Positions 248 to 48,110 of a stretch of DNA of 64,000 bases are shown here, piece by piece (position 1 is the first letter of the stretch; the number at the start of each line of letters is the position of its first letter). A program made the translations under genes and the position numbers. This stretch comes from Haliotis rufescens. Its lineage: Eukaryota. The DNA is taken from contig NW_025963791.1 in the NCBI RefSeq assembly GCF_023055435.1, positions 7,440,001 through 7,504,000 on the forward strand, given 5' to 3'. A model generated the notes under the pieces. It saw nothing but the letters and a program-made list of their open reading frames with translations, made no database searches and was not told the origin of the DNA.

Positions 248-1340
248 TGTAACAGCGGTACTCTGGTCCTCTCAAAGATAAGAGAGTACTTGTTGGGTTC
301 AAGGGATTTATTTTCAATGGGCGTAGAGAACTACACGGTAGTCCGGATTTGCCCTAAAACATACATAATTTGATATAAATATCATGGGTATCATTATAAA
401 GGCACTATATAACAACAATACTAATTATACATTTAAATCTATAATTCCTTACTTTTGGCATATATATATATTAACAAATCCTTCCAGATAAAACAAATTA
501 CACTCTCTCTATATATATATAGTTAATCATACATAATTAATAAAACATAAATAGCATACCTCGTCTCAGGGACGCAGGCTGGAAACTCTCTTATATAGAG
601 ATGTGCAGTGAAATAGCCCTGCACAAATAAGTATACTACATATAAGTATACTACATATAAATATATCACATAGCCACAGTTACACTTGCATGTATGGAAT
701 ACAAGCATTATAAATTCTACAAAATACTATACATATATACATAATACATATACATATATCACTTCTAACCAGTTTAAGTCTATTTAATTAAATGTACATT
801 TGGCTATTATCTCAGTAAAATACACAGTTAAGTTGAATTAAGAATACATTAAAATGTCATAATACAATGCTAGCCAAAATACTATATCCAACAACAATGA
901 TTAAAATACATAACCTAAGCTTCCAGATAAATAAAGTAATAATTAAATGAACTTACCCTATATGATTCAGTGCAGAGAACGTGTTGAGAACGTGTTAAGA
1001 AAGTATGTCCTGACTGCTCAGTAGAAGTGTGATCAGTGTCCCCACATAATTGCAGAGAACATGCAACAAAGCTAGATCACAAAGAGCACCTAATCACAGG
1101 CCAAGCCTGTGACCAACCCATTGACAATAGCCAAGAAAGAAATGGCTGAACTACCCAAGCTATATACAGAACTAGCTTACCTGTGAATTAGTAGTTTTTG
1201 TGCAAGTGTTGAAGTTAACACAAGTATTTAGTAAAATAAATGTTAAATATTTAGGTTAGCTTATTAATTTAATTCATGTTTGGTTACTATGATCATACTT
1301 TAAAATCTAACAATATTCTATTTACAAGCATACTGCTACA
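248..1340 (-). repeat. 3' LTR (1093 bp)
   Basis: Element-sense termini TGTAGCAGT...GCTGTTACA (TG..CA with imperfect inverted repeat); preceded in element sense by the PPT. Confidence 0.95.
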
Positions 1341-1354
1341 TTCTCCCCTGCCAC
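1341..1354 (-). promoter_or_regulatory. Polypurine tract of the Gypsy element
   Basis: Minus strand GTGGCAGGGGAGAA directly abuts the 3' LTR start. Confidence 0.85.
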
Positions 1355-1379
1355 AGAAAATGGCGTCCCGAAATATATT

Positions 1380-4300
1380 CTATGTTACAGCAGAACCAGT
1401 TATCAGAAATAACATAGCCTTGTAGGCGTCTTCTGGGAGGTCCTGCAAAAGTCTGCCTTCAGCTAGAGTCTTAAGAAATGATGCTCTTGTTTTCCAATCT
1501 GTCAACAATGTTGGTGCTTGACTCATACAAAACTCTCCTCTTCCCATCCAGGCTGGCGGCTGACGCTGTCTTGTAGATCGCCTAGGTGGTAGAGTTGGTA
1601 GAACTCTCCTAGGCACCCTAATAGGTTCTGGATCTGGTTCTGGTTCTGGTTCTGGTTCCTGTTCTGGCTCTGGCCCTGGTTCTGGTTCTGGTTCTGGTTC
1701 CTGTTCCGGTTCCTGTTCTGGCTCTGGCTCCTGTTCCGACTTTGCCACTCCTTCTTCCTCAGCTTCCAGTTGAGGACTATCACCAGCTGTGGAATTACCT
1801 CCTTCTTCCCCCTCTTGAACCATTGCAGCAGTGGAATCTTCTAATTCCACATCTACATAGGTTTCATGTCCATCTGCTTCAGCTTGTGGGGCAGCATTTG
1901 ACGGAATGCTAACCACTGAAGACACATCAGTGAGGTCCACAGGTTGTGACTCAACCAGTACTATGGGATCATCGTCAGACTCGCTGTCTGATAGTGATTG
2001 GGTTGACTCTTGTTCCTTCACTATTGGTCCCAGGTACTTCGTTCTTGGCTTTGGAACGGGAACAGTCCTAGTCATGTCAGTGTCGATCTCTAGTGAACCC
2101 ACTGGCAGCAACAAGTTTCGATGAAGTGTCCTTAGTCGTCCATCTCCATCTTCCTTTTGTACACAGTACACTGGGATTTCTGGGTTGGGCTGGTCCCTCA
2201 CAACATAGATGCTTTCTTCCCACTTGTCTGCCAGTTTGTGCTTTCCATCAAATGCCAGCTGCTTTACTAAGACTCTGTCTCCAATGTTGAGAATAGCTCC
2301 TCTGACCTTGATGTCATACCTACTCTTCTGTCTCTCCCGGGCTCTATGTGCAGCAGCTGTTGCAAACTTGTAGGAGTCAGCAAGCCGTTGGCGCAGATCT
2401 TTGATGTAGGTGGTCTTAGATTGTCTACCTTGTGGAGAGCCTATTCCAAATGCAATGTCAACAGGTAAACGTGGCTGTCTACCAAACATAAGAAAAAAAG
2501 GACTTTCTCCGGTCGATTCATGTCGTGTGGCATTGTAAGCATGAACAAGTGGTGCTACATATGACTTCCAGTTGGTCTTCTGGGATGGTTGCAAAGAACC
2601 TAACATACTTATCAGTGTCCGATTGAATCTTTCTGTCATTCCATTTCCTTGTGGGTGGTAAGGTGTGGTGGTGCTTTTTTCTATTCCTGCCAGCTTACAT
2701 AGTTCCTTGATTAGGTTACTCTCAAAGTTGGCGCCTTGATCTGCATGTAGTCTTTGTGGAAAGCCATAGTGTACAAAGAAGTTGTTAAATAGGACTTCTG
2801 CAGTGGTCTTCGCAGTCATGTTCCTAGTAGGGTAGGCCTGAGCATATCTTGTAAAATGGTCAGTCAGAACAAGAATATGTTGATATCCTCCCTTCGACAT
2901 CTCCAGTGTAAGGAAGTCAACGCAAACTAACTCAAGGGGCTGGCTGGTAGTGATGGAGAGAAGAGGAGCTCTGGCTTCTGCTGGTGTTCTTCTGAAGCAT
3001 CTGTCACAGTTTTTTATCCACTGATCCACATCTTTAGCCATTCCAGGCCAGTAAAATCTATCCCTGCAGAGAGATAGAGTCCGATCTCGGCCGAGATGTC
3101 CAATCTCATCATGAAGTCCGTTTAATGTTCTTTTGATGAATTCTGCCGGGAGAACTAGTTGCTTCCTTTCTTCTCCATCCATGGTAGTAATTCTGTACAA
3201 CACTCCCTGTTGTAATTGGAGATGACTGAATTCTCTGAGAAGACCAGTAGGAATATCCTCTGGTATCTTGTGGTGATGTAGTCCGTCAATGACTCTGTTG
3301 AGTACTGGATCCCTGTCTTGTGCTTTCCTCCAATCCCTTAGAGTGAAGCTAGCTATGTTGTTGCTGTGTTCAACGTCGTCATCTGCAATAACTTCAGCTG
3401 CAAAGCATAAACTCTCAATGTAGTTAGATGTCTGACAACTATTGCAGATCGCCTTTACAGATGTAGTAGCTATAGTATCTGTCTCGTCTTCTTGTGGCAA
3501 CCTTGAGAGCGCATCAGCATCTATGTTACCTTTACCTGGACGATACTTAATATCAAAGTTGAATGCGGAAAGAGCTGCAATCCACCTGTGTCCAGTAGCA
3601 TCCAATTTGGCTGTAGTCAAAACGTATGTGAGAGGGTTGTTGTCTGTCAGTACAGTGAACTGATTTCCGTAGAGATAGTCATAAAATTTCTCTGATACTG
3701 CCCATTTTAATGCTAGGAACTCCAACTTGTGTGCTGGGTAGTTCTTCTCTGCTTTATTCAGACCTCTGCTGGCATAGGCGATGACTCTCTTTTGTCCTTC
3801 TTGTTCTTGGTAGAGAATGGCACCTAATCCGAGTGAGCTTGCATCTGTATGAACCTCAAAAGGAAGACCATAATTCGCATATCCAAGAATAGGTGGCTTT
3901 GACAAAGCATCTTTCAGTTGCTTGAAGGCTGATTCCTGATCCTTACCCCAAGTCCATTTAACTTTCAAGTCTGTTTTCTTCTTGAAGCGATTATTCTTCT
4001 TCACTGTGGGAGGGAGCAACTGTGAGAGAGGCCAAGCGATATTAGAGAAATTCTTAACAAATTTTCTGTAGTATCCGGCAAACCCAAGGAATTGACGAAC
4101 TTCCTCTGGACTCTTAGGAGTTGGCCAATTCAGTACCTTCTCAATCTTTGTAGGGTCAGTTTGAACTCCATTTGCTGATACAATGTGGCCGACAAACTTT
4201 GCTTGTTCTTGTAAGAAGTTACACTTCTTGGGTGCCAACTTTATTCCACTTTTCCTCAGACGTTGGAAAATCCTTTCTAATCGAATGAGATGCTCTTCAT

Positions 4301-5843
4301 AAGTATCAGAAAACACGATGAGATCATCCAGGTATATCATACAAATTTCCAAATGAAGATCTCCTAACATATGTTCCATCTGGCGTTGATATGTAGCTGG
4401 AGCATTTACGAGTCCAAAAGGCAAGCGATTGTACTCATAAAACCCAAGAGGTCCAACTGTAAAGGCGGTTCTTGCTTTGTGACCTTCCTCTATTTCTATC
4501 TGATGGTAGCCGGACTTCATGTCCATAACAGTGAAAAACTTGGATCCTGCAAGTCTATCAAAGATTTCTTCTGCGCGTGGTAAAGCGTAGGCATCTTTAA
4601 CCGTGCGACGGTTGAGTGATCTAAAATCTATGCACATACGCAGAGATCCATCAGCCTTGCGTACAAGGACTACATTAGATGCCCATGGGCTATAAGAACG
4701 TCTGATGATTCCACAAGCAAGTAACTGTTGGAGATGGTCCTTCACCTCTTGAAACATAGATGGCGGTATGCGTCGATGTCTTTCCTTGAATGGGGTAGGG
4801 TCTGTCAATTCAATCCGATGTTTCACATCAGTGTAGTGGCCAACATCTAAATCTCCTGTTGAAAATACATCGCTGTATTTCTGAATTAACTCTTCACCCA
4901 TCTTCTTCTGTTCCTCAGTAACTTTATGAGATATGTTCACCTTGTCCAGTGGGTGCTGTTTTACTTCAGTGGCAATCTGTTCCAAGTTGATGGGTGCAAC
5001 TTTCTCAATTTGGACTGGTTGTATCTCACAGATGATTGTCCTAGGGGAAACAACTATGGTCTGGTTGGTCAGGTTTGACAATTGAACAGGAATTTGTAGT
5101 GATCGCTTGTACTGGTAGCGGAATAATGCAGGAGTTATCTCTATCCCCGGTGATATAGATGTCTTCTTGGCTGGATGAAGCATAACACAAGTTTCTCTAT
5201 AAGGCAGTTCCTTGTAGAGTGAACACTTGACTGTTACAGTTCTGTTGGGAGGTATAACTACTTTTGACACCTCACAGCTACGCATAAGTCCAAGGGTCCC
5301 ATCTTTCCTTTTAAGTTCCTTATCCTGCAAAATGATACTCCTAAAGGCAAGATACCAAGGTGTGTGCATTTTGCTGACTTGAAGAAAGTTAGGTCCAGTT
5401 GCCTCCCTACAGCTCTCAAGAGCTGGGATAAGGTAATTAGTCCCCAGTAAAACAGGTACACTCTTGTTGTACTCACTATCTGGGATGACTAACAATAAAC
5501 AATTACTTTTGAGACCTGGAGATAACCCAGTAGTTTCAACTGGAACTTCCACATATCCCATATAAGGCAATGTCTCACCATCAGCACATTCAATACGAAT
5601 GAAATCACCTAAGGTCTTAATCTCCAATGATGATAAACACTCCTTATGGAAACTTTCCGGGATAGTTGACACTGATGATCCTGTATCTAGGAGGGCCTTA
5701 TGTGAAACACCATTGATGATGACATTTGTCTCGTTAGCTGTTCCAATCAATCCAGCTGGTATCTTGAAATGGACGACTTCAGTGGAGCTCTGTCTGAAAG
5801 AACCTAATGTCTGCCCCTTGACATTGGTCCTCTGCCATTTAAA
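1380..5843 (-). CDS. pol: Pol polyprotein (protease, RT, RNase H, integrase), probably translated as Gag-Pol via -1 frameshift
   Basis: LLDTGS protease; YLDD RT; VHTDAS RNase H; H-x3-H...CDRC zinc finger; DDE core (CVDF, HADQG, MTERFNRT); acidic Pro/Glu tail. Uninterrupted 1509-codon ORF (1380-5909). Confidence 0.97.
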   Translation of the reverse strand, partial: FKWQRTNVKGQTLGSFRQSSTEVVHFKIPAGLIGTANETNVIINGVSHKALLDTGSSVSTIPESFHKECLSSLEIKTLGDFIRIECADGETLPYMGYVEVPVETTGLSPGLKSNCLLLVIPDSEYNKSVPVLLGTNYLIPALESCREATGPNFLQVSKMHTPWYLAFRSIILQDKELKRKDGTLGLMRSCEVSKVVIPPNRTVTVKCSLYKELPYRETCVMLHPAKKTSISPGIEITPALFRYQYKRSLQIPVQLSNLTNQTIVVSPRTIICEIQPVQIEKVAPINLEQIATEVKQHPLDKVNISHKVTEEQKKMGEELIQKYSDVFSTGDLDVGHYTDVKHRIELTDPTPFKERHRRIPPSMFQEVKDHLQQLLACGIIRRSYSPWASNVVLVRKADGSLRMCIDFRSLNRRTVKDAYALPRAEEIFDRLAGSKFFTVMDMKSGYHQIEIEEGHKARTAFTVGPLGFYEYNRLPFGLVNAPATYQRQMEHMLGDLHLEICMIYLDDLIVFSDTYEEHLIRLERIFQRLRKSGIKLAPKKCNFLQEQAKFVGHIVSANGVQTDPTKIEKVLNWPTPKSPEEVRQFLGFAGYYRKFVKNFSNIAWPLSQLLPPTVKKNNRFKKKTDLKVKWTWGKDQESAFKQLKDALSKPPILGYANYGLPFEVHTDASSLGLGAILYQEQEGQKRVIAYASRGLNKAEKNYPAHKLEFLALKWAVSEKFYDYLYGNQFTVLTDNNPLTYVLTTAKLDATGHRWIAALSAFNFDIKYRPGKGNIDADALSRLPQEDETDTIATTSVKAICNSCQTSNYIESLCFAAEVIADDDVEHSNNIASFTLRDWRKAQDRDPVLNRVIDGLHHHKIPEDIPTGLLREFSHLQLQQGVLYRITTMDGEERKQLVLPAEFIKRTLNGLHDEIGHLGRDRTLSLCRDRFYWPGMAKDVDQWIKNCDRCFRRTPAEARAPLLSITTSQPLELVCVDFLTLEMSKGGYQHILVLTDHFTRYAQAYPTRNMTAKTTAEVLFNNFFVHYGFPQRLHADQGANFESNLIKELCKLAGIEKSTTTPYHPQGNGMTERFNRTLISMLGSLQPSQKTNWKSYVAPLVHAYNATRHESTGESPFFLMFGRQPRLPVDIAFGIGSPQGRQSKTTYIKDLRQRLADSYKFATAAAHRARERQKSRYDIKVRGAILNIGDRVLVKQLAFDGKHKLADKWEESIYVVRDQPNPEIPVYCVQKEDGDGRLRTLHRNLLLPVGSLEIDTDMTRTVPVPKPRTKYLGPIVKEQESTQSLSDSESDDDPIVLVESQPVDLTDVSSVVSIPSNAAPQAEADGHETYVDVELEDSTAAMVQEGEEGGNSTAGDSPQLEAEEEGVAKSEQEPEPEQEPEQEPEPEPEPGPEPEQEPEPEPEPDPEPIRVPRRVLPTLPPRRSTRQRQPPAWMGRGEFCMSQAPTLLTDWKTRASFLKTLAEGRLLQDLPEDAYKAMLFLITGSAVT
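5784..5843 (-). promoter_or_regulatory. -1 ribosomal frameshift signal (slippery heptamer plus stem-loop or pseudoknot)
   Basis: U UUA AAU in gag frame at 5837-5843; pol lies in the -1 frame; hairpin GGACCAAUGUC/GACAUUAGGUUC starts 6 nt downstream. Confidence 0.8.
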
Positions 5844-6949
5844 GGTCCACGCCTCATATGATCTATGTTGACACGACAGCCTCTCATAAGGTGACCATAT
5901 TGTCCACACCTATAGCACTGGACTCCAGACTGTAGTTCAAAATCATGAGGTAGTTGTGCAGGATTATCAGGATTACCATGATGATGTTGATAATGATATT
6001 GTCCCTTGTGTTGTGCCTGGGATGCGGTAGGAGTGAACTGATTCATCCTTGCCTCCAGATTATCAATCTTGGATGACAGCTTGTCAATGACTCCCATCAA
6101 CGTTGATACTTCAGAGGTTGGTTGAAGTGAAGCCATGACCTTGGCTGGTACAGGTTTCTTCTGTACTTCCAGTTTCCTTTGCTCCTGGTCATATTCAATT
6201 CTCCTAATAGCTACTCGGAGCTGGTCGAAATCCTGTATGGTGTCAAATTTGTGTCCTGTTGAGTCCTTCAGTTCCTGCCTGAGTCCTGACCAGAAGACTG
6301 TCCTGAGAACAGAGCTTGATCTATCCTGTTGGATGAAACCTTGTAAGACAAGCCTGTCTAACATGTCCTCAAGTCTGCAACCCCATGCTGTAGCATCCTC
6401 CTTTTCCCCTTGGCGTGCACCATAAAACTGGGCCATAAGGACTTCACCTTGCTCCATGACTGATGGACTGAATACACTTTTCAGTTTATTAAGAACTGAA
6501 GTGAGTGATGCAGTGTGACCTAACCTCATTATGACACGGGCAGCTTCACCCCTAAGGGCTCTCCTGAGCGCCTGTAAGATCTCATCCTCAGAATGAGTCT
6601 TACTGCAAACGAAACTTTCAACCTCGTAGTGCCACACATCAAATGAAGTTTCACCTTTGGCCGTTGGATCACCAGAAAAACAAGAAAAACGAGGTGCTTG
6701 TTTAAAACTAAACGAACTGGGCAAACTTTGGGTTGGTGGAATGGCATGATGCTCTGACTCCTCAGATTTAAACTGTGGACTACCAGTAGCGCCCTGCAAC
6801 TCCTGTATTGCTACCATACCTGCTACCCAATCCCTGAGCTCATCCTCAGTCTTACCTTTTGGTGTAACACCTAGCTTCTCAAATCCCGCAAGAAAAGAAG
6901 CCAACTCATCAGAAGATAATTGGGACATGATGATAATGTAGGTATACAA
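5804..6949 (-). CDS. gag: Gag (PNMA-like capsid with CCHC zinc knuckle)
   Basis: FSG...F..W..E capsid motif, LRGEA, CYRCGQYGHLMRGC knuckle. The true start may be the second Met (MSQLSS). Confidence 0.93.
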   Translation of the reverse strand: MYTYIIIMSQLSSDELASFLAGFEKLGVTPKGKTEDELRDWVAGMVAIQELQGATGSPQFKSEESEHHAIPPTQSLPSSFSFKQAPRFSCFSGDPTAKGETSFDVWHYEVESFVCSKTHSEDEILQALRRALRGEAARVIMRLGHTASLTSVLNKLKSVFSPSVMEQGEVLMAQFYGARQGEKEDATAWGCRLEDMLDRLVLQGFIQQDRSSSVLRTVFWSGLRQELKDSTGHKFDTIQDFDQLRVAIRRIEYDQEQRKLEVQKKPVPAKVMASLQPTSEVSTLMGVIDKLSSKIDNLEARMNQFTPTASQAQHKGQYHYQHHHGNPDNPAQLPHDFELQSGVQCYRCGQYGHLMRGCRVNIDHMRRGPLNGRGPMSRGRH

Positions 6950-8015
6950 TTATGAATGAATCCGAAGTGAAGGTAATAGCTTGACCTTAAATGAACACGA
7001 ACAAAAAAATGTAAAGCTTATAAGACCTACATGGAGAAACAATGCATAATTAACGTAAATGTAATCCTGTATACAACTTAAGGGTTAAGAGTTTATAGTT
7101 TAGTTTTGCTTTATCAACTATCAAGTTTACGATAGTAATGGTTTAGGTTTAGTTAGGTAACAAAATTAGTTTAGTTTACCAAGTGTTGTGGGTTAGTAAC
7201 CTTTACCTGACAACTTAATCCATACTGTACTGATACAACTGACTCACAAGACCACACTCAAAGATTAAACAGGATAGGACAGGTGTGCTGAAAGAAGTGT
7301 AGTGCAAACTTACCTCATATAATATTAATTAAATACTAATATAATATTAACTATATATAATATTAAGTAACTATGTATAATATTAATTAACTATGTATAA
7401 TAGTAATTAAATGCTGAGAATTAGTGACAACACAACTGAACAGTAACTTAACAATATACTCTTTTATGGTATATGCCAAGATTAGCTAAGTCTTAAATAA
7501 TAACACTACCTAACAGTTCAATCAATAGGTCTGTGTTCTTGCAAAAGATGTCAACTAATAAACCAAGTAATGAATCAGTTAATTACAGTAGAATGTATAA
7601 ACAAAGTAGTCTGTCTAAAACTAACTAAACTAAACTAACTAATACAAACTAAACTAAGGGCCCATAATACTAATTATGTACAATCACCGCAGCAGAGCTC
7701 AATATGGCTGCACAAAAAAACATACCCATTCTCATGCGCACATAAACAACATGGGTGAAAAAAACATGTCTGTTAAACAATAATGGCACCAAAGAATTAT
7801 CAAAAATATGAAATACAGCTGTAAATATTAAGCATATCCAGTGTCAAAAGCCTGTATACAGACGCAAGTGTCTCTGATCACCAATAGGGAGAGTTCATGT
7901 ACACATATTTACACATGTTCACTTCATAATAGTGTGGGGCACAACTTCATACACTGTCACTGCAGGGGCTGCTCATGATGTTCCTCTCACTCTCCTGGAT
8001 CCATTGAAAATCAAG

Positions 8016-8033
8016 ATCCCACCAGGGATGCCA
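8016..8033 (-). promoter_or_regulatory. Primer-binding site of the Gypsy element (tRNA-Arg(TCT)-like; Asn not excluded)
   Basis: TGGCATCCCTGGTGGGAT lies 1 nt after the 5' LTR and starts with TGG, complementary to tRNA CCA. The tRNA identity is from memory and uncertain. Confidence 0.8.
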
Positions 8034-8034
8034 T

Positions 8035-9117
8035 TGTAACAGCGGTACTCTGGTCCTCTCAAAGATAAGAGAGTACTTGTTGGGTTCAAGGGATTTATTT
8101 TCAATGGGCGTAGAGAACTACACGGTAGTCCGGATTTGCCCTAAAACATACATAATTTGATATAAATATCATGGGTATCATTATAAAGGCACTATATAAC
8201 AACAATACTAATTATACATTTAAATCTATAATTCCTTACTTTTGGCATATATATATATTAACAAATCCTTCCAGATAAAACAAATTACACTCTCTCTATA
8301 TATATATAGTTAATCATACATAATTAATAAAACATAAATAGCATACCTCGTCTCAGGGACGCAGGCTGGAAACTCTCTTATATAGAGATGTGCAGTGAAA
8401 TAGCCCTGCACAAATAAGTATACTACATATAAGTATACTACATATAAATATATCACATAGCCACAGTTACACTTGCATGTATGGAATACAAGCATTATAA
8501 ATTCTACAAAATACTATACATATATACATAATACATATACATATATCACTTCTAACCAGTTTAAGTCTATTTAATTAAATGTACATTTGGCTATTATCTC
8601 AGTAAAATACACAGTTAAGTTGAATTAAGAATACATTAAAATGTCATAATACAATGCTAGCCAAAATACTATATCCAACAACAATGATTAAAATACATAA
8701 CCTAAGCTTCCAGATAAATAAAGTAATAATTAAATGAACTTACCCTATATGATTCAGTGCAGAGAACGTGTTGAGAACGTGTTAAGAAAGTATGTCCTGA
8801 CTGCTCAGTAGAAGTGTGATCAGTGTCCCCACATAATTGCAGAGAACATGCAACAAAGCTAGATCACAAAGAGCACCTAATCACAGGCCAAGCCTGTGAC
8901 CAACCCATTGACAATAGCCAAGAAAGAAATGGCTGAACTACCCAAGCTATATACAGAACTAGCTTACCTGTGAATTAGTAGTTTTTGTGCAAGTGTTGAA
9001 GTTAACACAAGTATTTAGTAAAATAAATGTTAAATATTTAGGTTAGCTTATTAATTTAATTCATGTTTGGTTACTATGATCATACTTTAAAATCTAACAA
9101 TATTCTATTTACAAGCA
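8035..9117 (-). repeat. 5' LTR lacking its outer 10 bp
   Basis: Matches 248-1330, then CGAGTAAGCA replaces TACTGCTACA. Confidence 0.93.
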
Positions 9118-12587: not shown

Positions 12588-12748
12588 TGTAGCGGCCACA
12601 AAATTTCCAAGTCCCGTGATGGGATTCGAACCACGGACCTTCCGATCAGAGGTCGGACACCTTGTCCACATGACCATAGAGGTTAACCCCGTCAGCAAGC
12701 TGACAAGGTAAGGATGTCATCTGTAGGATGACTCCACACCCTGCTACA
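12588..12748 (-). mobile_element. Solo LTR of the tRNA-containing TRIM
   Basis: 161 bp, TGTAGC...GCTACA, near-identical to 21504-21664, TSD TAAT on both sides. Confidence 0.92.
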
Positions 12749-20700: not shown

Positions 20701-21503
20701 TCTTTTCACAACTGATACACAGAAAAGTGTTTTAACTGTATATTTTAAGTCATTAAGTTGCAGACAAAGCATCAAAGACAGCATCATATATTACAAAAAG
20801 TACATTGAAATTCGATCTTAGGACTAGTCATGTATTTCTCATGGAATTTCCCGAAGTGAATGAAAGTACGCCTGCAACGTCCATTAACTAAAGCTTTCAA
20901 GACTAATCTGCCAACAGCTATTACTTTTAGTACTACATGTGGTTAAGCTGTTGGTAGGGCCAGAGACTCTTCATTTTCAGACTGAAACTGCAGTACTCTA
21001 GACTTGCAGACTATTACAGACTTGCATGGGCTGTATTGGGTATATTTGTTTCAGGGTCTGTATGACAGACTAGTAGGCTTGATGTGAAATGTTCACATTA
21101 AACCCACTAAAAGCATCGCTACCAACCAGACTTTGCACACAAACAGTAATTACTACTGTTAAAGAGACCTCAATGAGTGAGACTGACATGTCCGAAGTAG
21201 TTGCAAGGGTGACCTGAGACAGTGTCCTGCACATGTCCTGCACATGGCTGCCAGTTGTGCATATTGTGCACGTCTTGCCTGCAAAGGCAAACTCCCTGTC
21301 AAAAATATTAAAATCTTCCCACGCCAACCTAGCGCCTACAAATGTGCCCCTGCACATCTTCAACATGATCAGCACATCTGAGTTTCTCTGTAACTTAAGA
21401 GGTGGTTGGATAGCCTATAATGGTTACAGTATTAGAAGAACCTGGTTCGATTCCCCACCCCAGTGTACAATGACTTAAGCTCATCTTGTCTGTGCTATGA
21501 TAT

Positions 21504-21930
21504 TGTAGCGGCCATAAAATTTCCGAGTCCCGTGATGGGATTCGAACCACGGACCTTCTGATCCGAGGTCGGACGCCTTGTCCACATGACCAAAGAGGTT
21601 AACCCCGTCAGCAAGCCGACAAGGTAAGGATGTCATCTGTGGGATGACTCCATGCCCTGCTACACACTCCCTCGTCAACTGAAGGCATGTCCCGGCCGCA
21701 TAGAAGGGTACTGAGGCTTATTTTGCTCAAATTTAAAATGAACGTGCTCAGCCCCACGTTGGGCGCCAATGTAGTGGCCATAAAATTTCCGAGTCTGGAG
21801 ATGGGATTCGAACCACGGACCTTCTGATGCGAGGTCGGACGCCTTGTCCACATGACCAAAGAGGTTAACCCCGTCAGCAAGCCGACAAGGTAAGGATGTC
21901 ATCTGTGGGACGACTCCACACCCTGCTACA
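21504..21930 (-). mobile_element. TRIM (miniature non-autonomous LTR element) with tRNA-Arg-derived LTRs, Helenus-like
   Basis: LTRs 21504-21664 and 21770-21930 (161 bp, TG..CA); 105-bp interior; PBS TGGCGCCCAACGTGGGGC (tRNA-Lys) at 21751-21768; purine tract GAGGGAGTG before the 3' LTR; TSD ATAT. Confidence 0.95.
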
Positions 21931-21959
21931 ATATAATGGAATAAACGCGAAAAGCATTG

Positions 21960-22817
21960 TAACATGAGTAAAGTTTCCCACGGTAGTAACAAGAGTAAAG
22001 TTTACCAGGGTAGTTACATGAGTAAAGTTTACCAGGGTAGTTACATGAGTAAAGTTTACCAGGGTAGTAACATGAGTAAAGTTTACCAGGGTAGTTACAT
22101 GAGTAAAGTCTACCACGGTAGTTACATGAGTAAAGTTTACCACGGTAGTTACATGAGTAAAGTTTACCACGGTAGTTACATGAGTAAAGTTTACCAGGGT
22201 AGTAACATGAGTAAAGTTTACCAGGGTAGTAACATGAGTAAAGTTTAGCAGGGTAGTAACATGAGTAAAGTTTACCAGGGTAGTTACATGAGTAAAGTCT
22301 ACCACGGTAGTTACATGAGTAAAGTGTACCAGGGTAGTTACATGAGTAAAGTCTACCACGGTAGTTACATGAGTAAAGTTTACCAGGGTAGTTACATGAG
22401 TAAAGTTTACCAGGGTAGTTACATGAGTAAAGTTTACCAGGGTAGTAACATGAGTAAATTTTACCACGGTAGTAACATGAGTAAAGTCTACCACGGTAGT
22501 TACATGAGTAAAGTTTACCAGGGTAGTTACATGAGTAAAGTCTACCACGGTAGTTACATGAGTAAAGTTTACCAGGGTAGTAACATGAGTAAAGTTTACC
22601 AGGGTAGTTACATGAGTAAAGTTTACCAGGGTAGTAACATGAGTAAAGTTTACCAGGGTAGTTACATGAGTAAAGTCTACCACGGTAGTTACATGAGTAA
22701 AGTTTACCAGGGTAGTTACATGAGTAAAGTTTACCAGGGTAGTTACATGAGTAAAGTTTAGCAGGGTAGTAACATGAGTAAATTTTACCACGGTAGTAAC
22801 ATGAGTAAAGTTTACCC
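21960..22817. repeat. 27-bp minisatellite (CATGAGTAAAGTTTACCAGGGTAGTTA)n
   Basis: About 32 highly homogeneous units with a few toggling variant sites; no spacers. Confidence 0.97.
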
Positions 22818-23297
22818 TGTTCACACAAACACTGATAACTGATTGGTTATGGGGGATAATACGTGTCTACTTTGATGAAACACACTCCTGTCAAAAACTG
22901 TATGCATATTGTATATCAACCGTGTCAATCGCTGATAATAACTGAAAAATCTTCAAAGAAAATAAATAGATATATCTTCAATGGGAATATCTATTTTCGA
23001 ATATATGCTAAATGTCATTAACTGAGGAGTAAATTTTCCATGTCATTTACATCGAAATGTATCGATTGACGTTGTGACACACTGACATGACACTGTGTGC
23101 CACCCCCAGTTGTGTAAAGACGTGTCGCTGAAATAAAAATGAAACTGCACTGGTTATTTAGGTGGTAATCAACAATTCAAACAAATTGATAAATTGACTT
23201 ACATGTGTGGCAAACATTGCTTCTGTGTTTAAGATCCATTCGTACAAATATCTGGGACATCTTTACCGCAATCAGATTGACCCCGCGGTTCGGTCTA

Positions 23298-46763: not shown

Positions 46764-47725
46764 TGTAATTCAGTCCTTTTTAATGATGGTAATAACAATT
46801 GTTTCAGTTCAAGAGCATTGTCTTCGTTATTTGTTAACAATGGTTGGTTTTCACTAGTTACAAGATATCTGTCAACATGTATTGGACATGTGTTCCATTG
46901 ATTTTAACATATTGACATTGACTCCATACAGTCATTCATTCAATCATGAGTAGGTTTTACGCCGCTTTTAAAATTTAGCAATAATCCAGCAATATCACGA
47001 CGGGGTACACCAGAAATGGGCTTCACACATTGTACTCATGTGGGGAATCGAACCCGAGCCTTCGGCGTGACAAAGCAAACGCTTTAATCCACTGGGTTAT
47101 CTCTATGGACAGTACTTTCGACTGGTTTGACTTGTGTTCGGCGCTATTAACCACTAGGCTACTCATTTGAACCAACTCGTGTTATACCGGGACAAGCCGA
47201 ATAGCGACTCGTGCCCCTCTCGTGGCCATTTTTTCCGACTGGGTTCAGTCTGAGCGTAAACGGGCATAGCTGAAAGAATTGTCAACTCGTTGCGTAAGGA
47301 TACACGTCATTCGTGACCAACTCGTTTTATTCTGGGACAAGTGGAAAGTGAGTTTCCAAAGGGGCGAGTGGTATCTGATGATGTAAATTTTACTGCAAAT
47401 ATTAAACCGGTTTGAAAACAAGACACTGCTAACTGTTGTCTGAGAATGTATTCTGCCGATAAAAGTACTGTGCGACAATGTTTTTAGTAAGCAGCTTTAC
47501 GGAAACTGTGAGCGAACACAATGCTGCCCAATACCTGAACGACATAAATGTATAAAAAATGGATTTATATGCTTATGTATAACGTTATGCATTCGATACC
47601 AAAAAAAATAACGTGCCTTATATGACGAAAACTGATTTTCCTCGATGACGTCAAAAGATGACAGAGGTTACACACGTACACATAAAAGGGTCATAACTCC
47701 GCTATTCTTGGGTGCGCGAAATACG

Positions 47726-47864
47726 TGTAGCAGGTTATGGAGTCATCCCGCCCCTACTTGAGGGGTTAGCCTCTTTGGTCATGTCGACAAGACGTCCGAC
47801 CTCTGATCATCAGGTCCGTAGTTCGAATCCCATCACGGGACTCGGAAATATTATGGCCGCTACA
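47726..47864 (+). mobile_element. Solo LTR of the tRNA-containing TRIM (internally shortened)
   Basis: TGTAGCAG...GCCGCTACA, 139 bp, B-box GTTCGAATCCC, TSD TACG on both sides. Confidence 0.88.
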
Positions 47865-48110
47865 TACGCATATGTCGGAATGTGCACGTTTTTGTGTTTT
47901 GTTAAAGAGGAACCAAACTATTCCAACACAAATATCGATATTGAAACTGCATACATTTAGGTATATAAAAAACATAAGAAATTATGAAATCGTACTTTAT
48001 AAAAAAAGAAGTAATAGCGAAATGGATGGCCCTATCTAACCTACTAATTAGTCCTCAGACTCCAACATTCCCCTGATGGTGCAAGTGTAATTTGACATAT
48101 GTTGCACCAT

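What the first reader, a model, noticed from the sequence alone, without database searches (positions are those of the whole stretch)
21504..21930. 427-bp LTR retroelement whose LTRs carry a captured tRNA-Arg Pol III promoter
Seen: two 161-bp LTRs, an 18-nt tRNA-Lys PBS, a purine tract, a 4-bp TSD (ATAT) and only 105 bp of non-coding interior. Each LTR (minus sense) contains TGGACAAGGCGTCCGACCTCG(G/C)ATCAGAAGGTCCGTGGTTCGAATCCC. Known: this tracks tRNA-Arg(TCG) (TGGATAAGGCGTCTGACTTCGGATCAGAAG, recalled) including the B-box. Small-RNA-derived TRIMs exist (plant Cassandra with 5S; the recently named tRNA-bearing Helenus group). Inference: a SINE/LTR hybrid that uses one tRNA as promoter and another as primer, transcribed by Pol III and mobilised by a Gypsy partner. 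This family may be undescribed.
Basis: partly seen in the sequence, partly recalled or inferred. Interest (0 to 1): 0.85.

Follow-up and report, generated by a model that had tools for sequence, protein, structure and literature searches.

The report
Abalone Helenus-type miniature LTR retrotransposon
This is a real 427-bp non-coding LTR retrotransposon whose two repeats each carry a decayed arginine-tRNA gene with intact RNA polymerase III promoter boxes. It is a new family, in a new host class (a sea snail), of the Helenus group described in 2024, so it is well formed but not a new kind of element.

Summary
Window 21504-21930 (minus strand) is a complete TRIM: two 161-bp LTRs (153/161 identical, TGTAGC...GCTACA), a 19-nt tRNA-Lys PBS, a short purine tract, 105 bp of non-coding interior and an ATAT target duplication.

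It belongs to a large family: about 1,800 LTR cores and 625 interiors genome-wide, with solo LTRs and tandem arrays. Of 12 independent two-LTR copies, 11 have perfect 4-bp duplications and 6 have identical LTRs, so the family was active recently.

LTR positions ~62-134 derive from tRNA-Arg(TCG); two old copies match the host gene's anticodon arm exactly. The segment is no longer a tRNA (ARAGORN and Rfam both negative). It keeps an A-box-like motif, a perfect B box at tRNA spacing, and one TTTT run downstream.

A multi-copy Gypsy family shares the LTR termini, PBS, PPT end and 4-bp duplication, and is the candidate partner.

Assembly statistics identify the host as red abalone, a gastropod. Helenus (Kojima 2024) was reported in molluscs only from bivalves, and no published Helenus sequence I could search has an Arg-type module.

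The scan noted the same family twice elsewhere in this genome (s1-811158, s1-813581).

Verdict: new member of a known kind.

The parts
21500..21503 (.). Target-site duplication ATAT (left on + strand)
   Evidence: identical 4 bases flank both ends.
21504..21664 (-). 3' LTR (161 bp, minus sense TGTAGC...GCTACA)
   Evidence: the repeat finder D2; 153/161 identical to the 5' LTR.
21531..21603 (-). tRNA-Arg(TCG)-derived segment of the 3' LTR (LTR positions 62-134)
   Evidence: Local alignment to the genome's own tRNA-Arg-TCG gene, z = 14 against shuffles. Not a tRNA by ARAGORN or Rfam.
21582..21592 (-). A-box-like motif TGGTCATGTGG in the 3' LTR (LTR 73-83)
   Evidence: 9/11 to TRGCNNAGTGG, the textbook consensus as I recall it; intact in 54/57 LTRs sampled.
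21538..21548 (-). B box GGTTCGAATCC in the 3' LTR (LTR 117-127)
   Evidence: 11/11 to GGTTCGANNCC; starts 44 nt after the A-box start, as in a tRNA; intact in 51/57 LTRs.
21516..21519 (-). Single TTTT run in the 3' LTR (LTR 146-149), candidate Pol III terminator and end of R
   Evidence: exactly one T4 per LTR in 49/57 LTRs, always at this place.
21665..21676 (-). Polypurine tract GACGAGGGAGTG abutting the 3' LTR
   Evidence: Younger copies read GACGGGGGAGTA, whose end GGGGGAGTA matches the Gypsy candidate's GGGGGTGTA at 8/9.
21665..21769 (-). Non-coding interior (105 bp)
   Evidence: 625 genome matches to a 27-mer of it at up to 2 mismatches.
21750..21768 (-). Primer-binding site TGGCGCCCAACGTGGGGCT (tRNA-Lys1,2 type)
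21770..21930 (-). 5' LTR (161 bp)
21797..21869 (-). tRNA-Arg-derived segment of the 5' LTR (A-box-like 21848-21858, B box 21804-21814, TTTT 21782-21785)
   Evidence: Same register as the 3' LTR.
21931..21934 (.). Target-site duplication ATAT (right on + strand)
12588..12748 (-). Solo LTR of the same family, 161 bp, 94% identical, TSD ATTA
47725..47865 (+). Solo LTR of the same family with an internal deletion, TSD TACG

Best explanation
Shown: this is an older, inert copy (LTRs 5% diverged) of a recently active, non-autonomous terminal-repeat retrotransposon in miniature of the Helenus type, in the red abalone genome. Inferred from its anatomy: it replicates like any LTR retroelement. tRNA-Lys anneals to the 19-nt PBS to prime minus-strand DNA, the purine tract primes the plus strand, and integration makes a 4-bp target duplication. 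The proteins must come from elsewhere. The best candidate is a multi-copy Ty3/Gypsy family with near-identical LTR termini (TGTAGCCGGG...CGGCTACA against TGTAGCAGGG...CCGCTACA), the same 19-nt PBS, a similar PPT end and a 4-bp TSD. Also inferred, not shown: the decayed tRNA-Arg(TCG) copy in each LTR acts as an internal type-2 Pol III promoter. Transcription would start around LTR position 55-62 in the 5' LTR, read through that LTR's T4 run, and stop at the T4 run (146-149) of the 3' LTR. That gives U3 of about 1-60, R as the tRNA-like stretch, and U5 as the last 12 nt. Because the promoter lies inside R, every new copy carries it.
For: Structure and family: (at least 60 full-length hits at 94-96%, tandem arrays of 267-bp period); 11/12 perfect 4-bp TSDs and 6/12 identical LTR pairs; 1,816 LTR cores against 625 interiors, which implies several hundred solo LTRs; two solo LTRs with TSDs in this window. 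tRNA-Arg origin. Promoter-like features: B box 11/11; A-box-like 9/11 (10/11 as TGGCCATGTGG in old copy L059, read off the sequence); A-to-B start distance 44 nt as in tRNA; no TATA, AATAAA or ATTAAA in the LTR. One T4 per LTR at a fixed site in 49/57 LTRs, and no T4 in 36/37 interiors. The tRNA-like segment is in the same sense as the PBS. Changes shared between subfamilies hit the anticodon loop (CCTCGGA, CCTCTGA, CCTCTTA) but neither box. tRNA-Lys primer. Partner: PR-RT-IN domains; 838-bp LTRs 98.9% identical, TSD TAGT, termini, PBS, PPT; at least 18 copies at 95-98%. Precedent: Helenus, Cassandra and TRIMp3 (PMC10886601); Cassandra LTRs carry Pol III promoters and terminators (PMC7215508).
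Against: The T4 run in the 5' LTR would stop much Pol III transcription about 90 nt after the start, before the PBS, so full-length RNA needs read-through. The A-box-like motif departs from consensus at two positions. Copies are so alike that intact boxes across copies show little beyond neutrality; per-site variation is about the same inside and outside the tRNA-like part. The Gypsy link rests on short cis-signals only. There is no longer similarity in the LTR or interior, and the one copy examined has its pol split into several frames. A T4 after the B box is not universal in published Helenus LTRs: it was absent in 7 of the 10 bivalve LTRs shown.
Confidence: 0.72

Rival explanations
1. An ordinary Pol II-transcribed TRIM. 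The tRNA-Arg relic would be a passenger, left by an old tRNA or SINE insertion into an LTR and copied along, with no promoter role.
For: The segment is no longer a tRNA. The A box is imperfect. A T4 run directly after it would stop Pol III before the PBS in the 5' LTR. Conservation across copies does not discriminate.
Against: The 161-bp LTR has no TATA box and no AATAAA or ATTAAA, whereas the candidate Gypsy LTR has both kinds of motif (sequence). The B box is perfect and the A-B spacing is exactly that of a tRNA. Subfamily changes fall in the anticodon loop, not the boxes. The same architecture recurs independently in Helenus, Ajax and Cassandra (PMC10886601).
Confidence: 0.17
2. Each LTR is an independent short Pol III gene making a roughly 90-nt tRNA-like RNA that ends at the T4 run, as reported for the 5S unit of Cassandra. 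The full-length template for retrotransposition would arise by another route: rare read-through, or transcription across tandem arrays.
For: The T4 lies 19 nt after the B box in both LTRs. [quoted passage not shown] Tandem arrays of up to 16 LTRs exist.
Against: It overlaps with the best explanation rather than excluding it. The RNA would have no tRNA fold (z = -1.1). There are no expression data.
Confidence: 0.1
3. Not a mobile element, but a locally duplicated or satellite-like repeat that happens to contain a tRNA pseudogene.
For: The family forms tandem arrays (267-bp period). Some copies sit inside larger tandem duplications (2.47-kb and roughly 7-kb periods). The window copy abuts a 27-bp satellite.
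Against: Dispersed copies on many scaffolds have different flanks and perfect 4-bp TSDs. There are solo LTRs with TSDs, a canonical PBS and PPT, and identical LTR pairs.
Confidence: 0.01

Closest known systems
Helenus (TRIMp3) of bivalve molluscs, Kojima 2024, PMC10886601
   Same: TRIM of about 350-500 bp; LTRs of 104-193 bp with a tRNA-derived stretch that keeps A and B boxes but is not a working tRNA; PBS for a tRNA 3' end (many use tRNA-Lys, TTGGCGCCCA...); 4-bp TSD; Gypsy partners proposed; solo LTRs and tandem arrays; copy numbers in the hundreds to thousands. The PPT end GGGGGAGTA and an LTR start TGTAGCNGG also occur in scallop families (by eye).
   Different: The host is a gastropod (red abalone); Helenus was reported in molluscs only from Pteriomorphia bivalves. 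The tRNA source is Arg(TCG): the Arg signature GGATCAGAAG is absent from all sequences in the paper's DataS1, and six family-specific motifs are absent too. The PBS is complementary over 19 nt, longer than any listed in its Fig. S2.
Cassandra (plant TRIM with 5S rDNA in the LTRs)
   Same: A small-RNA gene with an internal Pol III promoter and a terminator inside each LTR; non-coding; long LTR-interior-LTR tandem arrays.
   Different: 5S (type 1 promoter, boxes A/IE/C) rather than tRNA (type 2); plants; tRNA-Met PBS; 5-bp TSD.
Ajax (nemertean TRIM with a partial 5S promoter)
   Same: Only the promoter-bearing part of the small RNA survives in the LTR.
   Different: 5S-derived; 5-bp TSD; tRNA-Leu PBS.
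tRNA-derived SINEs of molluscs, e.g. MESC SINEs whose head derives from tRNA-Arg (PMC4758252)
   Same: A tRNA-Arg-derived head with A/B boxes used as an internal Pol III promoter; non-autonomous; short.
   Different: SINEs have no LTRs, PBS or PPT, end in a LINE-related tail or simple repeat, and are moved by LINEs. No SINE with this element's head was found in the genome: one search found 1 hit outside the TRIM context, and one search found 3 exact tRNA-Arg-TCG anticodon arms in all.
biv-TRIM (Satovic et al. 2019, PMC6934838)
   Same: A molluscan TRIM with solo repeats and tandem arrays.
   Different: biv-TRIM has 202-218-bp repeats, a 77-80-bp interior, no clear PBS, and no tRNA-like LTR segment reported.

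Membership tests
TRIM (terminal-repeat retrotransposon in miniature) | Two short direct terminal repeats with TG...CA ends around a short non-coding interior; total length under about 1 kb | tested here: met
   161 + 105 + 161 = 427 bp; TGTAGC...GCTACA. The only ORFs of 130 aa or more that overlap the element arise from the adjoining 27-bp satellite.
TRIM (terminal-repeat retrotransposon in miniature) | PBS next to the 5' LTR and PPT next to the 3' LTR | tested here: met
   19-nt complement of a tRNA-Lys-type 3' end plus CCA, one nt after the LTR. A purine tract abuts the 3' LTR.
TRIM (terminal-repeat retrotransposon in miniature) | Target-site duplications at independent insertions; solo LTRs | tested here: met
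   11/12 perfect 4-bp TSDs; two solo LTRs with TSDs; 1,816 LTR cores against 625 interiors.
Helenus (Kojima 2024) | tRNA-derived sequence inside the LTR, in sense orientation | tested here: met
   Alignment to the host tRNA-Arg-TCG gene over LTR 81-131, z = 14-18 against shuffles; control tRNA-Leu z = 5-7. Old copies L057 and L059 have the 22-nt anticodon arm identical to the gene.
Helenus (Kojima 2024) | Conservation around boxes A (TRGCY...YGG) and B (GGTTC) | tested here: met
   B box GGTTCGAATCC in 51/57 LTRs; A-box-like TGGTCATGTGG in 54/57, and TGGCC... in an old copy. Caveat: the copies are young, so this shows presence, not selection.
Helenus (Kojima 2024) | 4-bp TSD in animal families | tested here: met
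Helenus (Kojima 2024) | Sequence identity to a published Helenus family (is it already described?) | tested here: not met
   Six family motifs and the Arg signature are absent from DataS1.fa, while control motifs were found. Repbase and Dfam could not be searched.
TRIMp3 (TRIM transcribed by RNA polymerase III) | Transcripts made by Pol III from the LTR's internal promoter | not testable with these tools
Only sequence features support it.
Functional tRNA gene | Cloverleaf detectable by tRNA finders | tested here: not met
   ARAGORN finds none in the window or in old copies. The Rfam tRNA model gives no hit even at E up to 10 on the LTR alone. The MFE fold is not a cloverleaf.
SINE | tRNA-derived head followed by a body and a LINE-type or simple-repeat tail; no LTRs | tested here: not met
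   The tRNA-like part lies inside a direct terminal repeat, with a PBS and PPT between the repeats. No SINE shares the head.
Cassandra / Ajax | 5S rRNA-derived sequence in the LTR | tested here: not met
   Rfam finds no 5S match in the LTR. The segment aligns to tRNA-Arg.

The most novel reading that the evidence does not exclude
This would be the first Helenus-type (tRNA-promoter) TRIM from a gastropod, and the first whose LTR module comes from tRNA-Arg. The backbone signals (LTR start TGTAGCNGG, Lys PBS, PPT end GGGGGAGTA) are shared with bivalve Helenus and with a resident Gypsy family, while the tRNA module differs. That would suggest the Pol III module has been exchanged or acquired independently on a conserved Gypsy-dependent chassis. 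With many copies that have identical LTRs, and a single T4 that would define R, it would be a tractable animal system for testing Pol III-driven LTR retrotransposition.
Probability: 0.45. Interest if true: 0.5.

Novelty: new member of a known kind. Interest (0 to 1): 0.4.

Why it matters
It extends the Helenus/TRIMp3 group from bivalves to gastropods and to a new tRNA source. That bears on whether these elements arose once in molluscs or repeatedly. It gives a concrete Gypsy candidate for the partner, matched in termini, PBS, PPT and TSD; partners were proposed for animal Helenus only from PBS similarity. It also offers a simple testable layout for a Pol III-made LTR element: U3 about 60 nt, R as the tRNA relic up to a T4 run, U5 12 nt. 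On the practical side, about 1,800 tRNA-like LTRs in red abalone can mislead tRNA and SINE annotation. Young copies with identical LTRs may be polymorphic and usable as markers in a species of conservation concern.

Tried and rejected
I did not try to get around this.

2. A 'variant LTR' at C594 (L039) shares LTR positions 3-83 and 135-161 plus the PBS, but has a different tRNA-like SINE and a (CACT)n run in place of the Arg module. I considered it as a module-swapped sister family or a partner. One search shows the stretch after its PBS is unique to that locus and the rest is an abundant unrelated repeat. It is a single rearranged copy with a nested SINE, not a family.

3. L040 has a TRIM LTR and PBS followed by foreign sequence. 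That sequence is an antisense integrase fragment of another element, so this is nesting, not an autonomous relative.

4. PBS hits spaced 2.47 kb (C1) and about 7 kb (C2) apart are TRIM copies inside larger tandem duplications with no ORFs. They are not partners.

5. The window's own young Gypsy (248-9117) has other termini and a different PBS. It is not the partner.

6. Per-site variation among 57 LTRs is about equal inside and outside the tRNA-like part. Only three sites carry variants shared by at least 3 of 24 loci. This is too little divergence to test selection on the boxes.

7. A search for a donor SINE with the same head found essentially none.

8. A metagenome scan for the core 27-mer gave 0 hits. 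A paper search for family-specific strings gave none.

9. The protein atlas search on the window's Gypsy Pol gave no host clue. The host was then identified from assembly statistics.

Full report
WHAT IS THERE. Read on the minus strand, window 21504-21930 is a complete miniature LTR retroelement.
- The 5' LTR is 21930-21770 and the 3' LTR is 21664-21504. Both are 161 bp, begin TGTAGC and end GCTACA, and are 153/161 identical.
- One T after the 5' LTR comes TGGCGCCCAACGTGGGGCT (21768-21750). This is the tRNA-Lys1,2 primer-binding site as quoted in PMC8775094.
- The matching tRNA 3' end, GGTTCGAGCCCCACGTTGGGCG, occurs 197 times in a 297-bp tandem array in this genome. With CCA added, complementarity is 19 nt.
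- The 105-bp interior ends in the purine tract GACGAGGGAGTG next to the 3' LTR.
- ATAT flanks both ends.

IT IS A FAMILY, AND IT MOVED RECENTLY.
- A search of the window's own assembly returned at least 60 full-length matches at 94-96% identity from 1,935 first-look candidates. These include LTR-interior-LTR tandem arrays with a 267-bp period; one has 16 LTRs.
- Among 12 independent two-LTR copies, 11 have perfect 4-bp target duplications, all different. Six have identical LTRs, three differ at one base, and the window copy is the most diverged at 8 differences.
- Exact pattern counting gives 1,816 LTR cores (27-mer around the B box, up to 2 mismatches) against 625 interiors (27-mer, up to 2 mismatches). 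At least several hundred LTRs must therefore be solo or fragmentary.
- Two solo LTRs lie in this window: 12588-12748 (TSD ATTA) and 47725-47865 (internal deletion, TSD TACG).
- The family makes up roughly 0.03% of the genome.

THE tRNA-LIKE PART.
- The genome's own tRNA-Arg(TCG) gene (L058, ARAGORN) aligns with LTR positions 81-131. The score lies 14 standard deviations above shuffled LTRs. A tRNA-Leu control reaches only z = 5-7, which reflects the generic B box.
- Two old, diverged copies (L057, L059) carry GCGTCTGACTTCGGATCAGAAG. This is identical to the gene's D-stem and anticodon arm. The 22-mer occurs only three times in the genome: the gene and these two relics.
- L059 also keeps TGGCC at the start of the A box, as in the gene. 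The derived region therefore runs from about LTR position 62 to 134.
- It is no longer a tRNA. ARAGORN finds nothing in the window or in the old copies. The Rfam tRNA model gives no hit even at E up to 10 on the LTR alone. The minimum-energy fold is not a cloverleaf and is no more stable than shuffles (z = -1.1).
- What it keeps is promoter-like. TGGTCATGTGG at 73-83 matches TRGCNNAGTGG at 9/11. GGTTCGAATCC at 117-127 matches GGTTCGANNCC at 11/11. The two start 44 nt apart, as positions 8 and 52 do in a tRNA. The consensus motifs and tRNA numbering are textbook knowledge, recalled rather than tested.
- A single TTTT run at 146-149 follows.
- In 57 LTRs from 24 loci, the A-box-like motif is intact in 54, the B box in 51 and the T4 in 49. 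No LTR has a second T4, and 36 of 37 interiors have none; the exception is the window copy, through a mutation.
- The anticodon loop differs between subfamilies: CCTCTGA 21, CCTCGGA 16, CCTCTTA 12.
- The LTR has no TATA box and no AATAAA or ATTAAA.

HOW IT MOST LIKELY WORKS. The PBS, PPT, TG...CA ends and 4-bp TSDs show standard LTR-type reverse transcription and integration. The proteins must be supplied in trans, because the element encodes nothing.

For transcription I favour Pol III, at about 0.55-0.6. The start would be a few nucleotides upstream of the A-box-like motif in the 5' LTR, and the stop would be at the T run of the 3' LTR. That makes U3 about 1-60, R the tRNA relic (about 90 nt) and U5 the last 12 nt. 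Since the promoter lies inside R, it is regenerated in both LTRs of every new copy.

The weak point is that the same T4 in the 5' LTR has to be read through. This parallels the poly(A)-signal problem of retroviruses whose signal lies in R. Cassandra LTRs are likewise described as carrying Pol III promoters and terminators.

None of this is shown. The copies are too similar for a selection test.

CANDIDATE PARTNER. I searched for the PBS followed by any base other than the TRIM's G. This gave 10 hits, of which eight were TRIM copies or variants.
- One remaining hit (C334) is an 8.9-kb element with 838-bp LTRs (98.9% identical), TSD TAGT, and protease, reverse-transcriptase and integrase (H2C2 + rve) domains in Ty3/Gypsy order.
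- Its LTR starts TGTAGCCGGG against the TRIM's TGTAGCAGGG, and ends CGGCTACA against CCGCTACA.
- Its PBS is the same 19 nt.
- Its PPT ends GGGGGTGTA against GGGGGAGTA.
- The family has at least 18 copies at 95-98% over LTR end, PBS and leader. About 12 of the first 100 exact PBS+G hits belong to it.
- No longer similarity exists, as Kojima expects for a Pol III TRIM and a Pol II partner.
- The copy I read has its pol in several frames. I did not look for or single out an intact one.

HOST. The assembly has 615 sequences and 1,334,454,214 bases, and its contig C1 is 94,228,061 bases long. The red abalone primary assembly xgHalRufe1 is reported with 616 scaffolds, 1,334,471,355 bp and a largest scaffold of 94,228,061 bp (PMC9709998). 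Two earlier follow-up notes of this scan also call the genome red abalone. The host is therefore Haliotis rufescens, a vetigastropod.

COMPARISON WITH WHAT IS KNOWN. Kojima (2024, PMC10886601) defined Helenus as TRIMs with a tRNA-derived LTR sequence. He proposed the class TRIMp3 together with Cassandra and Ajax. Animal Helenus make 4-bp TSDs and were linked to Gypsy by PBS similarity. Many bivalve families use tRNA-Lys. Every defining feature is met here.

The differences are these.
- The paper lists molluscan Helenus only from five orders of Pteriomorphia bivalves, and no gastropod.
- Its molluscan LTRs were aligned to tRNA-Lys, and some are predicted as tRNA-Thr.
- The Arg signature GGATCAGAAG occurs in none of its supplementary sequences, on either strand. 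Six motifs specific to this family are also absent, while control motifs were found.
- By eye, scallop families share the LTR start TGTAGCGGG, the PBS TTGGCGCCCA and the PPT end GGGGGAGTA. One (Helenus-1_ArIr) has GGCCGCTACA after its B box. This hints at a common Gypsy-dependent backbone with a different tRNA module. I could not test it.
- I found no SINE with the same Arg head in the abalone genome. So the 'SINE inserted into an LTR' origin has no local support, although tRNA-Arg-headed SINEs exist in other gastropods (PMC4758252).

VERDICT. This is a new family in a new host class of a kind published in 2024, so it is a new member of a known kind and of moderate interest. The same family was noted by the scan at two other places in this genome (s1-811158, s1-813581). 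I could not search Repbase or Dfam.

Noticed in passing
window 248-9117 (minus strand): A very young Ty3/Gypsy element. Its 1,083-bp LTRs are 100% identical (248-1330 and 8035-9117). Open gag-like ORF (PNMA, zinc knuckle) at 5804-6949 and open 1,509-aa pol (PR-RT-RNaseH-IN) at 1380-5909. The PBS is TGGCATCCCTGG..., a form Kojima's Fig. S2 assigns to tRNA-Arg-TCT. It is a different family from the TRIM's candidate partner.
   Followed up: partly
window 21962-22816: A 27-bp satellite (31.7 copies, 94% matches) begins about 30 bp from the TRIM's end. It creates spurious long ORFs (21874-22824, 21926-22828).
   Followed up: partly
window 21398-21470 (+): A second, unrelated tRNA-like stretch with A- and B-box-like motifs (TAGCCTATAATGG ... 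GGTTCGATTCC) lies about 35 bp from the TRIM. A DNA search of the genome returned only itself; it is probably an old SINE relic.
   Followed up: partly
G000 contig C55:3856-58589 and beyond (L045-L056): A long tandem array of tRNA genes. Each unit of about 1,047 bp holds two tRNA-Arg(ACG) genes and one tRNA-Leu(TAA) gene. There are 195 exact ACG anticodon arms genome-wide (198 matches minus the three TCG arms), against one exact tRNA-Arg(TCG) gene.
   Followed up: partly
G000 contig C79:12688373-12803913 and beyond: 197 copies of a tRNA-Lys-type 3' end, 196 of the 197 at a 297-bp period on one strand. This is a large tRNA-Lys gene array, the likely source of the primer for this TRIM and its Gypsy candidate.
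   Followed up: no
L043 (C1:43918500-43925500) and L042 (C2:368000-377999): Complete TRIM copies embedded in larger tandem duplications (periods 2,469 bp and about 6.7-7.2 kb). The element has also been amplified passively by segmental tandem duplication.
   Followed up: partly
L039 (C594:1787402-1790421, minus): A TRIM 5' LTR in which the Arg module (positions 84-134) is replaced by a different tRNA-derived SINE (partly duplicated) with a long (CACT)n run. The PBS is intact and is followed by locus-specific sequence. It is a single locus, not a family.
   Followed up: yes
LTR position 101 (the G of the TCG anticodon, inside a CpG) across copies: This is the most variable site of the LTR (G 11, T 11, C 1, A 1 in 24 loci). 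It marks subfamilies, showing the anticodon is free to change while the boxes stay.
   Followed up: partly
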